A stretch of DNA of 64,000 nt, from the NCBI GenBank assembly GCA_037379345.1, contig CM074515.1:21638001-21702000 (forward strand), given 5' to 3'. Source of the DNA: Perna viridis. Taxonomy: Eukaryota. The notes under the pieces were generated by a model. It had not been told where the DNA came from. It did no database searches and was given only the letters and a program-made list of their open reading frames with translations. How positions within the stretch are numbered: position 1 is the stretch's first letter; each line of letters opens with the position of its first letter. Both the position numbers and the translations under genes were made by a program. This document shows positions 55,764 to 60,900 of the stretch, piece after piece.

Positions 55764-56477
55764 TTAATATTACTGAAATAAAAAAACAGTACTGCACCCA
55801 AGAGTGAAAGAAGAAATTGACCAAAACTTCTATGATAGTGCAGTTGTGTTTAGTCTTCTTTCAATTATGATTATGTGGAACATCTACATGTATAAAATGG
55901 TCTTTTCCACAAATGTCATACAAAGTATGTGTATTTAATTGATGTTTTCTTCACTTTACTTTTGTAAAATGTTAATTCAAAAGTTATTAAAGCCATCTCT
56001 TTGAAATCCTTTACTACATAATTTATAGAGAGAGTATCTTTATCATAAGTAGATAGGTTATATTTAAAAAGATAAGGTAAAAGCAATGGCAAGTTATATT
56101 CATAATCATGGCACCATACATGTCTAATTGTACAATGTAAGTTCGAGGAAGACCTCTTTCGTTTTCATAGTGAAATGAACTCATTTTTTGAAGATTTGCC
56201 AAAATGTATGTTGTACAGATATGTATTTGACCCAAACATGTTACTATTTTATTTAAATCATGCTGTAAATTATATTTATAAACCATTTATTTGTAAATAC
56301 CACATATCTGCTCATTGTTTGAAAATAGAAACTGGTAGATATTATAATATTGAGAGCCATCTGAGACTTTGCAATATGCGTGATAAACATGTAATTGAAG
56401 ATGAATATCATTTTATTTTAGTATGTGAAAAGTATAATGAACTCCGGAAGAAATTTATCAAACCATATTATTGGAGA

Positions 56478-56716
56478 GTGTGTTGGTGGCTTAATAACCA
56501 CAGGGTAGTGATATGCGTCTAGTGCAGTAGTGATCGAACGTCTCTAGATCGCTACTGACGCTGGCTAGTCTACGTGTAGACGAAAAGGGGAGAAGCGTAA
56601 GCAGAAGCCTTCCTCTGCCAGTACATAGCCTCTACACTACCAAGACTCCTTCAATTTGCCTCCCCGAGGTAACACACGGTAACTTGGGTCTAGTACTCAA
56701 GGCTAACATGAAGGGG
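56478..56716 (+). ncRNA. Predicted HDV-like (double-pseudoknot) self-cleaving ribozyme with an expanded J1/2, at the RTE 5' end
   Basis: P1 GTGTGTT 56478-84 / AACACAC 56671-77. P2 CTCCTTCA 56646-53 / TGAAGGGG 56709-16. P3 GCC 56658-60 / GGT 56668-70. L3 TCCCCGA. P1.1 CC with GG 56678-79. P4 CTTGGGT/ACTCAAG. J4/2 GCTAA with catalytic C at 56703. Confidence 0.8.
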
Positions 56717-57090
56717 ATCTCGGAGTAACAAGGACCCTAGAGGTGTAGAGTGCAGGCCCACCGGCGCGTGGAACACGCCTTGGCTCTCACCAACCTTGCC
56801 CCACCTATGGGTTAAATAGATCGCTGCCTTGTGATGGACTGTTGAGTCAAAGGCTACGGGAGACAACCCAGACAGAAAACGATGGTCAGACTGGGATCAA
56901 ACCTTTGAAAGGGAACCTGTCTAGGAGAGGAAACTCTGATGTAAAACCCGGCTAGAAAGGAGTCATCACCCATGGTAGGGAACCTATCTAGGAGAGCTGA
57001 CTCTGATACAAAAGCATGTGAGGGACTTGCTGACCACCACATTAAAATAAAGCTGAAGCTAGAGGGCCAACCCCCCACTAGTGGATACAA

Positions 57091-60000
57091 ATGGTTACAG
57101 GAACGATTACAGTAAAAGTCATTCCTCGGACTCGTCAACGACTAGAGAAAGAGGACCAAACCAAACATCGAAGACAGCAAATGACGCGAAAGCTGATGAA
57201 GTTGTTCTCACCAAAACAACCAACAACCATAGGCACTTGGAATGTTAGAACAATGTATCAAAGTGGCAAAAGCTTGCAAATTGCGAACGAAATGGATAGA
57301 TAAAATATCGAAATTCTAGGACTCAGCGAAGTAAGATGGAATACAGCTGGAATGACAACACTATCTTCAGGTCATACGGTCATATTCTCAGGAAATCCAA
57401 ATGAAGACGACATACATGACAAAGGCGTGGGATTCATGCTTACAAAGAAAGCCAAGAAATCGCTTTTGGAGTGGAATCCAATATCTGCAAGAGTGATATC
57501 AGCTAGATTTGACACTCGATTCCAGAAAACAACATTTATACAGGTGTATGCACCAACAAACACCGCAGACGAAGATGATAAAAATGACTTCTACAACTTA
57601 TTACAATCAGTTGTTGATGCCGTTCCTAAAAGAGACATCCTTATCATCTTAGGAGATCTGAATGCCAAAGTAGGTGATGACAGAGGAGGTAGAGAAAGGG
57701 AGATAGGACCACATGGAATAGGGCAAATGAATGAGAACGGAGAGATGTTTGCTGACTTTTGCGCTATAAACAGTCTAGTAATTGGCGGTACTTGGTTTCC
57801 ACATAAATCTTGTCATAAAACCACCTGGATTTCACCATCTGGAGACACTGAAAACCAAATAGACCACATAACAATAAGCCGTCGATGGAGATCTTCATTA
57901 CAAGATGTACGAACAAAACGTGGAGCAGACGCAGCATCAGATCACCACCTTGTAATTGGAAAAATTAAACTCAAGCTTTTAACAACAAAGAAAAGAGAGA
58001 CTACAAAAAGGAAGTTTAATGTTGAGAAGTTTAAAGATCAGAAAGTGAAAGAAAACTTCCAAATTACACTCAGGAACAGATTTAGTACTTTATTAGATCT
58101 TGACAACGAAGAAATGAACAATGATATTGATGACATCTGGAACTCAACAAAGACAGCCATTCTGGAAGCATGCGAAGAAACAGTTGGTTTCATTCAAGTG
58201 AAAAGAAAGAAATGGATGTCAGATCAAACATGGGATACAATATCTGAAAGAAGGGAAATAAAAGAAAAGTTGATGAGTGCCAAAACCAGACAGCAAAAGA
58301 AAAACCTGCAAGACCTTTACAGCGCAAAAGACAGAGAAGTGAAGAAAAGCTGTAAAAGAGATAAAAGAAACCATGCTGAAAAGTTAGCAGTAGAAGCTGA
58401 AAACGCCTGCTTAAAAGGAGACATCAAAACATTGTATAACATCACAAGACAACTCAGTGGAAAGATCTCTCAAAATGAAAATTTACCAGTCAAAGATAAA
58501 AACAATAATACCCTCACAAAGCTAGAAGATCAGCTTGACAGATGGACGGAACACTTTAGTGAGGTATTGAACAGACCACCACCAACAAATCCACCAATAC
58601 TTGAAGACGGTCCAACACTTAACATAGAGACTGACAAAATTACCGAAAATGAAGTAAGAAAAGCCCTAAAACATCTTAAGAATGGGAAAGCAGCGGGAAT
58701 CGATGGCATACCACCAGAAGCCCTCAAGTCCATGAATGACACTACCATTCAATATCTTCTTGGGCTATTAAACCAGATATGGGAAAAAGAAAAAATTCCA
58801 AAAGACTGGCAAAAGGGACTCTTGGTAAAACTACCTAAAAAGGGGGACAAATCCAATTGCAATAACTGGAGAGGAATAACTCTTTTGTCCATTCCTAGTA
58901 AAATCCTATGCAGTATAATCTTACAAAGAATGAAAGAAGAGATTGATAGCAAGCTGAGAGATGAACAAACTGGATTTAGACAAGAACGATCATGTGTCGA
59001 CCAGATTGCAACACTCAGAATAATTATTGAGCAAATGATCGAATGGCAGTCATCCCTATATCTAAACTTTATTGACTTCCAGAAAGCATTTGACAGCATA
59101 GATCATCAGGTCTTGTGGAACATTCTAGGACACTATGGGATTCCTCCTAAGATTATTTCCATGATTAAGTTACTGTATGAAGAATTCTCTTGTCAGGTCA
59201 TACATGCTGGTACTTTGACGGATCCTTTCCCTGTAAAAACTGGCGTAAGGCAAGGATGCATTCTCTCTCCCCCTTCTCTTTCTCATAGTCATCGACTGGA
59301 TAGCAACAACAGCTTACAACGACCCTCATGGTATACAATGGACACTAACATCTCGTCTAGAAGACCTCGAATTTGCAGACGACATATGCACACTATCGCA
59401 TCGTCTTCAAGATTCCCAACACCAGGTCAACCATCTCGAAGAAACAGCTAAAAGAACAGGATTGTATATCAACACAGCCAAAACCAAAGCCATGAGAATC
59501 CAACAAAACCAGATGGATCCAATATTGGTAAATAACCAACAGATAGAGAATGTAGATAAATTTACGTACCTTGGAAGTGTCATGAGTACAACTGGAGGCA
59601 CTGACGAAGATGTACAAGCCAGAAAGATGAAAGCATTACAGGCTTTTTCCATTCTAAAACCAGTATGGAAAAGTAGAACACTGAGAACGACTACTAAGAT
59701 CAAAATTTTCAACAGCAATGTTAAGTCTGTCCTGTTATATGGTTGCGAGACCTGGAGAGAAACAGAAAACACCATGAAATCTGTACAAGTCTTTGTTAAC
59801 AAGTGCCTAAGAAATATACTGAATATCAGATGGCCAGAAAAAATAACAAACAAGAAACTCTGGCAAAGAACAAAACAACAACCAATAGAAAACACCATTC
59901 GAACCCGAAAATGGAAATGGATTGGTCATACTTTAAGGAAGAACAATAAAAACACTACAAAGCAAGCTTTAGATTGGAATCCCCAAGGGCAAAGAAAAAG

Positions 60001-60154
60001 AGGAAGACCAAAGAACACCTGGAGGAGGGGTTTGAACTCTGAACTGAAGAGAGTAGGACTAACGTGGAAGAATTGTAACACCATCGCCCAAAACCGTAGC
60101 GAATGGAGAGAAACTGTAGTCGCCCTATGTCCACCCATGGACGAAATGGAATAA
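57091..60154 (+). pseudogene. RTE APE-endonuclease / reverse transcriptase ORF, disrupted by one nonsense codon (57301-57303) and one +1 frameshift (C-run 59269-59273)
   Basis: IGTWNVRTM, ILGLSEVRW, QVYAPT, GDLNAKVG, NQIDH, SDHHLV (APE). KAAGIDGI, PKKGDKSNCNNWRGITLLS, FIDFQKAFDS, GVRQGCILSP, LEFADDI, FTYLGS, LLYGCETW, RKRGRPKNTW (RT and C-terminus). Confidence 0.93.
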
Positions 60155-60900
60155 ATCATAAATCATATTATTGGAGAAAACCTTCGAATTTTAAACTTGT
60201 ACAACTGCTATCTGTTCATAATGTAAAGGAACTTAACAATTTAGGGAAGTATTTATCCCTGGCCAAGAAGGCACATAATTAAATTCATTTATAAATGAAT
60301 ATAATATAATATGCGTTATTTTTTATCATACTCTGCTGTACTGTTACTGTTATATGGGTATACTTACTTATATGATTATCTGACTGATTGTTTGAATGTA
60401 TTATATATAGTTCACTAATGTAATAGAATATTTGTAATATTCATATTCTGTAAGTTGTATTGCTTACGAATGAAAGATAATTATTATTTATGTCATCCCT
60501 TATCAATTGTACAATGGTTTGTGCATTGTGTTCTATATAGTAAACCAGAGTACCATAAGCATGTTCCTACCTAACATCAACCTACACTGGCACAGCAAAA
60601 AGACCAACAAAACAGACAGAACTCAAACACACTTTGCTTTGGGATAAGCATTTAAAATAGATACTGAACAAGGGCAGACTTGTTGACATTATAATTAAAA
60701 AGTGAAACAAAAGAAGCTTTGTCTCCATATAATCAAAAATATAGCAAAAAGCCACAAAGACAGCATTGTTCATTACATGTAAATTTGAAGCAAAGAAGCT
60801 TTGTTTCCAACTAAAAATATCTATAGCCAGTCATTGATCAGTTCTGTTTCAAAAGATCAGAAAAAACCCCTGACTGATATGTGATAGAATACAAACTTAC

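What the first reader, a model, noticed from the sequence alone, without database searches (positions are those of the whole stretch)
56478..56716. HDV-like ribozyme whose cleavage site is the exact first base of the RTE element, with a 161-nt structured J1/2 insert
Seen: the TSD fixes the element start at G56478. The first 7 nt (GUGUGUU) pair perfectly with AACACAC about 190 nt downstream, and that segment sits in the HDV order: P2, P3 GCC, L3 UCCCCGA (U at position 1, G at position 6), P3' GGU, P1', GG, P4 hairpin, GCUAA, P2'. The J1/2 linker (56485-56645) folds into its own domain closed by GGUAGUG 56504-10 / CACUACC 56635-41, with inner hairpins CAGUAGUGAUC/GAUCGCUACUG, GUCUAC/GUAGAC and GCAGA/UCUGC. 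Established: HDV-like ribozymes cleave 5' of the first P1 G and process the 5' ends of R2 and some RTE retrotransposons from read-through transcripts. Inference: this mollusc RTE family frees its own 5' end by self-cleavage, and the large J1/2 may aid translation initiation of an uncapped RNA. The top of P2 is imperfect (AUUU against CA), which may be a family variant or a copy-specific lesion.
Basis: partly seen in the sequence, partly recalled or inferred. Interest (0 to 1): 0.82.

Follow-up and report, generated by a model that had tools for sequence, protein, structure and literature searches.

The report
HDV-like ribozyme heading an RTE retrotransposon
The first 239 bases of this RTE jumping gene fold like a hepatitis-delta-type self-cutting RNA whose cut site is the element's first base; copies and sister families support this strongly, but RTE elements are already known to do it.

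Summary
Every helix sits at the stated coordinates. A 14-bp target-site duplication bounds a 3.69-kb RTE element (56478-60163). 20 of 30 genomic copies begin exactly at G56478.

No cleavage was measured, so the evidence is comparative. A covariance model of the core found diverged sister families in the same genome (proteins about 35-68% identical) and relatives in metagenome contigs. Across them:
- P1 covaries over about 190 nt: GUGUGUU/AACACAC, GUGUGCU/AGCACAC, GUGCAUU/AAUGCAC.
- P2, P4 and the 7-bp stem closing the 161-nt J1/2 domain also show compensatory changes. They are 90-95% paired, against 35-48% in slid controls.
- L3 U1 and G6 and the J4/2 C are conserved in 36-39 of 41 copies.
- Family B also starts at its P1 G.

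The imperfect top of P2 is a family-A trait, not a lesion of this copy.

This is a new member of a known kind. HDV-like ribozymes at RTE 5' ends, structured J1/2 "pinch" domains and J1/2 loops of 216-498 nt are all published. The scan already reported the same ribozyme on another copy in this genome. The translation role remains speculation. The ribozyme's distribution across RTE lineages is patchy.

The parts
56464..56477 (+). Left target-site duplication CATATTATTGGAGA
   Evidence: Identical 14-mer at 60164-60177.
56478..60163 (+). RTE-clade non-LTR retrotransposon, a defective copy. The 5'UTR is 56478-57090. The ORF-homologous region is 57091-60151, with a frameshift near 59270 and at least one stop before 57352. 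It ends in a short ATAAATC-type tail.
   Evidence: Pfam finds Exo_endo_phos, RVT_1 and DUF6451. tblastn of the intact 1020-aa relative P0001 gives 98.6-98.9% identity in two frames. At least 40 copies at 95-99% identity in the genome.
56478..56484 (+). P1 5' strand GUGUGUU. The predicted cleavage is between A56477 and G56478.
   Evidence: Pairs with 56671-77. 20 of 30 copies begin here. P1 is 93-94% paired across families, with compensatory changes at positions 4, 5 and 6.
56485..56645 (+). J1/2 peripheral domain of 161 nt. It holds a small hairpin (56486-89 with 56498-501) and a closing stem (56504-10 with 56635-41). Three inner arms lie at 56517-65, 56568-81 and 56586-633.
   Evidence: MFE -55.7 kcal/mol, z = -2.7. 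The closing stem is 90-93% paired, with 4-5 of 7 pairs compensatory. The small hairpin is 96% paired and arm 56568-81 is 89-92% paired. The third arm is poorly conserved as drawn.
56646..56653 (+). P2 5' strand CUCCUUCA, followed by the AUUU internal loop at 56654-57
   Evidence: Pairs with 56709-16. It is 92-94% paired, with 2-3 compensatory pairs.
56658..56670 (+). P3 (GCC with GGU) enclosing L3 UCCCCGA at 56661-67
   Evidence: L3 U1 is kept in 39 of 41 copies, C3 in 37 of 41 and G6 in 36 of 41. P3 is 70-78% paired. Family B carries a C.A mismatch at the middle pair.
56671..56679 (+). P1 3' strand AACACAC (56671-77), then GG (56678-79) for P1.1
   Evidence: The first P1.1 pair is well kept (18-24 of 20-28 sequences). 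The second is lost in family C, which has GU.
56683..56701 (+). P4 hairpin CUUGGGU / ACUCAAG with loop CUAGU
   Evidence: 95% paired, with 5 of 7 pairs compensatory. RNAalifold recovers it independently.
56702..56716 (+). J4/2 GCUAA (candidate catalytic C56703), CA, then the P2 3' strand UGAAGGGG at 56709-16
   Evidence: The C is kept in 36 of 41 copies and the final A in 40 of 41. The weak Rfam match to drz-agam-2-2 aligns GGCUAA and P2'.
60164..60177 (+). Right target-site duplication

Best explanation
Window 56478-56716 is the 5' end of a young RTE-clade retrotransposon. It encodes an HDV-like (nested double-pseudoknot) self-cleaving ribozyme.

Inferred mechanism: when the element is transcribed as part of a longer read-through RNA, the ribozyme cuts immediately 5' of G56478. 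This copy sits in the same orientation inside another repeated LINE-like sequence. The cut removes all upstream host sequence and leaves an element RNA that starts at its own first base and still carries the whole ribozyme. Every full-length new copy therefore begins at the same G and can repeat the process.

The 161-nt insert between P1 and P2 is a folded peripheral domain. Its conserved 7-bp closing stem most likely holds the far ends of P1 and P2 together, as the P1.2 helix does in the mosquito RTE ribozyme drz-Agam-2-1.

Shown here: the fold, its covariation, conservation of the core nucleotides, and the coincidence of P1 nucleotide 1 with the element's 5' end in two or more families. Inferred: actual cleavage in vivo, co-transcription, and any role in translation. 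This particular copy is a dead one with a broken ORF, so the function belongs to the family.
For: Sequence and coordinates.

Element boundaries: the TSD and the RTE domains APE, RT and DUF6451.

Shared 5' end: 20 of 30 copies start exactly at G56478 with unrelated flanks. Family B copies start at the G of their own P1, with 14 of 16 reading GTGTGCT.

Diverged relatives: core model R1 finds 97 matches in the genome, in distinct score groups.

P1 covariation over about 190 nt:
- GUGUGUU/AACACAC in the window
- GUGUGCU/AGCACAC in family B
- GUGCAUU/AAUGCAC in L108
- GUGUGCU/AGCACAU in L109
- GUGUUUG/AAAACAC in L097
- GUGCGCU/AGCGCAU in L112

Pair counts: in A3 80.5% of cells are paired against 35-47% when slid, and 33 pairs change on both sides, which 0 of 500 shuffles reach. 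In A4 90.1% are paired against 35-48%. P1, P2, P4 and the J1/2 closing stem are each 90-95% paired and show compensatory changes.

Independent prediction: RNAalifold recovers the small hairpin, the closing stem and P4.

Core nucleotides are conserved.

Known family: a weak match to drz-agam-2-2, an HDV-like ribozyme family in Rfam (RF01788, 18.7 bits, E 0.055).

Other samples: the same core lies upstream of APE and RT ORFs in metagenome contig L111.

RNA-seq: the element is transcribed at low level, with no reads in the 478 nt upstream.

Literature: the cleavage site is the first nucleotide of P1, and J1/2 domains activate large HDV-like ribozymes (PMC4908430). RTE ribozymes cleave at the element's 5' junction (PMC3774820, citing Ruminski 2011).
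Against: - No biochemical test was possible.
- The Rfam score is below the gathering threshold (18.7 against 38). No HDV or CPEB3 model matched.
- Nested-only folding of the 239 nt gives z = -1.85.
- RNAalifold prefers an alternative pairing of L3 UCCCC with the P2' GGGGA over P2. One covarying column fits both pairings.
- P3 is weak: a G.U pair here, and a C.A mismatch in the abundant family B. P1.1 is reduced to one pair in family C.
- Family A has a 2x2 internal loop between P2 and P3.
- Many family-C copies pair GUGUGUU with AAUGCAC only through two G.U pairs.
- The covariation rests on a handful of independent lineages.
- RNA-seq is too thin (29 reads) to show a 5' end.
- An internal promoter starting at +1 would also give a uniform 5' end.
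Confidence: 0.85

Rival explanations
1. The region is a conserved structured 5'UTR that has the HDV-like topology but does not cleave. The uniform 5' end would come from an internal promoter that starts transcription at G56478. The fold would serve as a protein-binding or ribosome-recruiting element.
For: - No cleavage data exist.
- P3 and P1.1 are weak in some abundant families.
- There is an internal loop at the P2/P3 junction in family A.
- In R2 elements the 5' pseudoknot region is also a protein-binding site, and an IRES-like role has been proposed (PMC6765202).
- The RNA-seq depth profile fits a transcription start equally well.
Against: - The nucleotides that matter only for catalysis are conserved: the J4/2 C, L3 U1 and G6, and the AA.
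- P1 begins at exactly nucleotide 1 in families whose P1 sequences differ. A promoter model does not predict this.
- RTE ribozymes of this type have been shown to cleave at the element junction (PMC3774820, PMC6765202, citing Ruminski 2011).
Confidence: 0.1
2. The match is a chance resemblance to the HDV motif in an otherwise ordinary 5'UTR.
For: The Rfam score is below threshold. The MFE z-score for the full stretch is modest.
Against: - Compensatory changes occur in P1, P2, P4 and the closing stem across families and across metagenome relatives.
- 0 of 500 shuffles reach the observed counts, and slid controls are 35-48% paired against 80-90%.
- A perfect 7-bp P1 sits at the independently defined first base.
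Confidence: 0.02

Closest known systems
drz-Agam-2 HDV-like ribozymes of Anopheles gambiae (Rfam RF01788 drz-agam-2-2; drz-Agam-2-1 studied in PMC4908430)
   Same: - An HDV-like core whose cut site is the first P1 nucleotide. HDV-like ribozymes at RTE 5' ends are published (PMC3774820 and PMC6765202, citing Ruminski 2011).
- A structured helix-closed domain in J1/2. The Rfam model itself carries a J1/2 hairpin. In drz-Agam-2-1 the P1.2 helix speeds cleavage about 1000-fold (PMC4908430).
- Similar sequence in GGCUAA and the P2' strand.
   Different: - The J1/2 here is much larger (161 nt) and multi-branched, with a small hairpin plus a closing stem around three arms.
- P4 is short (7 bp), whereas the Rfam model has a long P4 insert.
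- The first P1 pair is G-C, not G.U.
- The score is below the Rfam gathering threshold (18.7 against 38 bits).
- The host appears to be a mussel according to an earlier scan note. I did not verify this.
R2 retrotransposon HDV-like ribozymes (PMC3774820)
   Same: - 5'-end processing of a non-LTR element from a co-transcript.
- A conserved P1.1/P3/L3 core.
- Very large J1/2 loops (216-498 nt in silkmoths). In one species part of the loop is required for cleavage.
   Different: R2 is site-specific in 28S rDNA, and in most species it cleaves within upstream 28S sequence. Here the element is dispersed and the cut site is the element's own first base.
Twister-variant ribozymes at the 5' end of RTE elements (PMC8501958, PMC7761336)
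   Same: The position and presumed job are the same: 5' processing of RTE RNA. A twister-P1-like match lies about 115 nt upstream of the RTE ORF in the Littorina locus L106 (40.4 bits, below threshold).
   Different: It is an unrelated ribozyme fold. This shows that RTE lineages use different ribozyme classes.

Membership tests
HDV-like self-cleaving ribozymes (structural class) | Nested double pseudoknot in the order P1, J1/2, P2, P3, L3, P3', P1', P1.1, P4, J4/2, P2' | tested here: met
   All elements are present in this order. P1, P2 and P4 are 92-95% paired with compensatory changes. P3 is 70-78% and P1.1 65-73% paired.
HDV-like self-cleaving ribozymes (structural class) | Conserved active-site nucleotides: the catalytic C in J4/2 followed by a purine-rich AA, L3 beginning with U, CC for P1.1, and G near the 3' end of L3 | tested here: met
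   GCUAA carries C56703. L3 is UCCCCGA. Conservation is 36-40 of 41 across families.
HDV-like self-cleaving ribozymes (structural class) | Cleavage 5' of the first P1 nucleotide (a G) | tested here: inconclusive
   The support is indirect only. G56478 is the first base of 20 of 30 copies, and family B likewise starts at its P1 G. RNA-seq is too thin.
HDV-like self-cleaving ribozymes (structural class) | Mg2+-dependent self-scission abolished by mutating the catalytic C | not testable with these tools
   Needs in vitro transcription and a cleavage assay.
Rfam RF01788 drz-agam-2-2 (sequence family) | Covariance-model score at or above the gathering threshold (38 bits) | tested here: not met
   18.7 bits, E 0.055 on 2.5 kb. 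I therefore do not file it as a member of this Rfam family, only as the same structural class and the same biological setting.
RTE clade of non-LTR retrotransposons | A single ORF with an N-terminal APE endonuclease, RT and the RTE-type C-terminal domain. Also a short 3' tail of simple repeats, TSDs and a length of about 3.2-3.7 kb | tested here: met
   Pfam finds Exo_endo_phos, RVT_1 and DUF6451. The region is colinear with the intact 1020-aa P0001. The tail is of ATAAATC type and the TSD is 14 bp. No clade phylogeny was made.

The most novel reading that the evidence does not exclude
The ribozyme and its J1/2 domain may form a mobile 5'UTR module that is exchanged among, or repeatedly lost from, RTE-like lineages.

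The same core and the same 3' half of J1/2 head elements whose proteins are only about 28% (L111) to 35-68% (families B and C) identical to this one. RTE relatives at 50-59% identity in other taxa show no HDV-like core, and one (Littorina) has a twister-like motif instead.

If so, the conserved multi-arm J1/2 domain would probably do more than pinch P1 and P2 together. It might, for example, bind the element's protein or recruit ribosomes to an uncapped RNA.
Probability: 0.25. Interest if true: 0.55.

Novelty: new member of a known kind. Interest (0 to 1): 0.4.

Why it matters
This is a clean, well-supported natural example of an HDV-like ribozyme that defines the 5' end of an active-looking RTE family. 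It comes with several sister families in one genome, which supply ready-made compensatory mutants of P1, P2, P4 and the J1/2 closing stem.

That makes it a convenient system for testing how large peripheral J1/2 domains activate HDV-like ribozymes, and whether they also serve translation of uncapped retrotransposon RNA.

It does not change what is known about how RTE elements process their RNA.

Tried and rejected
- **L031 false positive.** The best genome-wide match to RF01788 (31.8 bits) is an AT-rich repeat. It has U in place of the catalytic C, no RT ORF, and copies that do not begin at the putative P1. I rejected it.
- **Other-species RTE relatives.** Models R1 and R2 found no HDV-like core in loci at 50-59% protein identity, even with filters off (amphioxus L103, Littorina L106, a fish L107, metagenome contigs L102, L104, L105). 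This gave no cross-species support from those loci. Contigs for P0002 and P0034 were not on record.
- **RNA-seq.** Only 29 reads were laid and no "begin" sites were called. The Logan contigs are multi-copy and only guessed to be RNA. This neither shows nor excludes a processed 5' end.
- **Papers not held.** Ruminski 2011 and Webb 2009 could not be read. Their content is cited second-hand through PMC3774820, PMC6765202 and PMC4908430.
- **Third J1/2 arm.**
- **L095.** A perfect GUGCAUU sits 202 nt upstream of the core and has its own downstream hairpin. The 5' boundary of that family was not verified, so I did not count it.

Full report
**1. What is in the sequence**

- P1: GUGUGUU (56478-84) is perfectly complementary to AACACAC (56671-77).
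- That 3' strand lies in an HDV-ordered core:
  - P2 CUCCUUCA (56646-53)
  - a 4-nt AUUU
  - P3 GCC (56658-60)
  - L3 UCCCCGA (56661-67)
  - P3' GGU (56668-70)
  - P1'
  - GG (56678-79), able to pair with C56662/C56663 as P1.1
  - the P4 hairpin 56683-89 with 56695-701
  - GCUAA (56702-06, candidate catalytic C56703)
  - CA
  - P2' UGAAGGGG (56709-16)
- J1/2 is 161 nt (56485-56645) and is closed by GGUAGUG 56504-10 with CACUACC 56635-41.

**2. The element and its 5' end**

The 14-mer CATATTATTGGAGA occurs at 56464-77 and again at 60164-77. The second copy directly follows a short ATAAATC-type tail. Between the two lie Exo_endo_phos, RVT_1 and DUF6451 domains.

An intact 1020-aa relative (P0001) aligns at 98.6-98.9% identity over 57091-60151. 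The alignment falls in two frames that join near 59270. This copy is therefore a dead RTE copy with a 613-nt 5'UTR, of which the ribozyme takes the first 239 nt.

The genome holds at least 40 copies of the 5' region at 95-99% identity. In 20 of the 30 fetched, the sequence starts exactly at GTGTGTT and the flanks are unrelated from position -1. The other 10 differ at, or are cut within, the first 1-7 nt.

The 79-nt core of this copy is identical to that of 22 of the 30 copies. The imperfect top of P2 is thus a family trait, not a lesion of this copy.

**3. Diverged relatives and covariation**

The family is too young to show covariation on its own, so I built a covariance model of the nested core (R1) and searched the whole genome. 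Besides about 44 family-A copies at 100-114 bits, it found a family at about 71 bits ("B", many near-identical copies). It also found a spread of older copies at 40-68 bits ("C" and others).

Their ORFs are about 44-50% (B) and 35-68% (C) identical to P0001.

Family B copies also begin exactly at the G of their own P1. 14 of 16 read GTGTGCT and have unrelated flanks.

P1 covaries with P1' across about 150-190 nt:

| Source | P1 / P1' |
|---|---|
| Family A (window) | GUGUGUU / AACACAC |
| Family B | GUGUGCU / AGCACAC |
| L097 | GUGUUUG / AAAACAC (6 of 7 pairs) |
| Metagenome contig L108 | GUGCAUU / AAUGCAC |
| Metagenome contig L109 | GUGUGCU / AGCACAU (G.U at the cleavage-site pair, as in HDV) |
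| Compact relative L112 | GUGCGCU / AGCGCAU |

Many old family-C copies keep GUGUGUU against AAUGCAC. That still pairs, through two G.U wobbles.

Formal counts on a 28-sequence alignment:
- 80.5% of cells are paired, against 35-47% when partners are slid.
- 33 pairs change on both sides, which 0 of 500 shuffles reach.

Counts on a 20-sequence alignment that includes metagenome relatives give 90.1% paired, against 35-48% when slid.

Per helix:

| Helix | Cells paired | Pairs with compensatory change |
|---|---|---|
| P1 | 93-94% | 3-4 of 7 |
| P2 | 92-94% | 2-3 of 8 |
| P4 | 95% | 5 of 7 |
| J1/2 closing stem | 90-93% | 4-5 of 7 |
| Small hairpin after P1 | 96% | 1 of 4 |
| Arm 56568-81 | 89-92% | 1-2 of 5 |
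| P3 | 70-78% | 0-1 of 3 |
| P1.1 | 65-73% | none |

An example for the closing stem is GGUAGUG/CACUACC in A against GGAUUGG/CCAGUCU in B. Family B has a C.A mismatch at the middle P3 pair. Family C has GU instead of GG for P1.1.

The active-site nucleotides are conserved in 41 core copies:
- L3 U1: 39 of 41
- L3 C3: 37 of 41
- L3 G6: 36 of 41
- J4/2 C: 36 of 41
- final A of J4/2: 40 of 41

RNAalifold, run without my structure, recovers the small hairpin, the closing stem and P4.

**4. Caveats**

- The lineages are few and related, so the shuffle counts are not probabilities.
- RNAalifold prefers pairing L3 UCCCC with the P2' GGGGA over P2. One covarying column fits both pairings. This may be a competing inactive fold.
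- The Rfam match to drz-agam-2-2 is only 18.7 bits, against a threshold of 38.
- Nested-only folding of the whole stretch gives z = -1.85. The J1/2 domain alone gives -55.7 kcal/mol and z = -2.7. Family B's domain has the same architecture but z = -0.7.
- RNA evidence is thin. One raw-read RNA run gave 29 reads. Depth is zero over 56000-56431 and starts in the bin that contains 56478. One contig from a run only guessed to be RNA starts at 56481.
- That pattern is compatible with processing, with a transcription start, or with reads coming from other copies.

**5. Mechanism**

The best reading is the known one for RTE and R2 elements.
- The element is transcribed within a longer RNA. Here it lies in the same orientation inside another repeated sequence. 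That sequence's ORF ends with a Cys/His motif, seen as ...HFILVCEKYNELR....
- The ribozyme cuts 5' of G56478. The cut RNA, which still carries the ribozyme, is reverse-transcribed to give copies with an invariant first base.
- The conserved closing stem of J1/2 corresponds to the P1.2 helix that "pinches" P1 and P2 together in drz-Agam-2-1. That helix accelerates cleavage by nearly three orders of magnitude (PMC4908430).
- In L111 the closing stem follows P1 directly. In the compact L112 the whole J1/2 is a 16-nt hairpin. Both fit that role.
- A role in translation of the uncapped product is published for other HDV-like ribozymes (PMC6765202, citing Ruminski 2011). It is untested here.

**6. 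Comparison with what is known**

- HDV-like ribozymes at RTE 5' ends, cleaving at the element junction, are published (PMC3774820 and PMC6765202, citing Ruminski 2011).
- Structured J1/2 domains are published (PMC4908430).
- J1/2 loops of 216-498 nt occur in silkmoth R2 ribozymes. In one species part of the loop is required for cleavage (PMC3774820).
- An HDV-like ribozyme in a mollusc (abalone) is mentioned there too.
- An earlier follow-up in this scan (s1-753431) reached the same conclusion on another copy in this genome. I re-derived it independently on this copy.

The finding is therefore real, but it is a new member of a known kind.

**7. What is mildly new**

The distribution is patchy.
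- RTE relatives at 50-59% protein identity from amphioxus, a periwinkle, a fish and metagenome contigs show no HDV-like core, even with filters off.
- The periwinkle element has a twister-P1-like match about 115 nt upstream of its ORF (below threshold).
- Contig L111 carries the same core and the same 3' half of J1/2, yet its APE and RT are only about 28% identical to this family's.

This hints that the 5'UTR ribozyme module is exchanged or repeatedly lost among RTE-like lineages. I did not test that further.

I did not verify the host organism.

Noticed in passing
window 56160-56477 and 60178 onward: The RTE copy is inserted, in the same orientation, into another repeated sequence. That repeat has at least 40 matches at 66-94% identity. 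Its ORF (56175 onward) ends with a Cys/His motif, seen as ...HFILVCEKYNELRKKF..., which I recall as typical of non-LTR ORF2 C-termini. This is a plausible source of read-through transcription. Pfam found nothing in the ORF.
   Followed up: partly
L106:2333-2387 (Littorina saxatilis, GCA_037325665.1): A twister-P1-like match (RF03160, 40.4 bits, E 1.3e-05, below the 67.2-bit threshold) lies about 115 nt upstream of an RTE ORF. That ORF's protein (P0093) is 49% identical to the 699-aa ORF of this copy. Different RTE lineages seem to carry different ribozyme classes.
   Followed up: no
L111:5015-5212 (-) with ORFs 3472-4395 and 1709-3559 (-), contig MDSQ01009507.1: The same HDV-like core (70.7 bits to R2) and the same 3' half of J1/2 head an APE+RT element. 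Its protein is only about 28% identical to this family's. This suggests the ribozyme 5'UTR module is shared across distant lineages.
   Followed up: partly
L112:3098-3178 (-), a GC-rich metagenome contig: A compact HDV-like ribozyme with a nearly identical L3/P3/J4/2 core. P1 is GUGCGCU with AGCGCAU, J1/2 is a 16-nt hairpin and P2 is short. No RT follows it, and an SNF2-type helicase ORF lies nearby.
   Followed up: partly
L104 and L105 (ENA metagenome contigs): Full-length RTE relatives at about 56% protein identity, with about 580 nt upstream of the ORF. No HDV-like, twister or other Rfam ribozyme match was found there.
   Followed up: partly
L031:1501-1635 (G000:C14:1255894-1256028): The best genome-wide match to RF01788 (31.8 bits) is an AT-rich dispersed repeat without the catalytic C or an RT. 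It is probably a false positive.
   Followed up: yes
window 60150-60163: The element's 3' end is a short tandem ATAAATC-type tail that overlaps the TSD by a few bases. The exact 3' junction is therefore ambiguous by about 1-3 nt.
   Followed up: no
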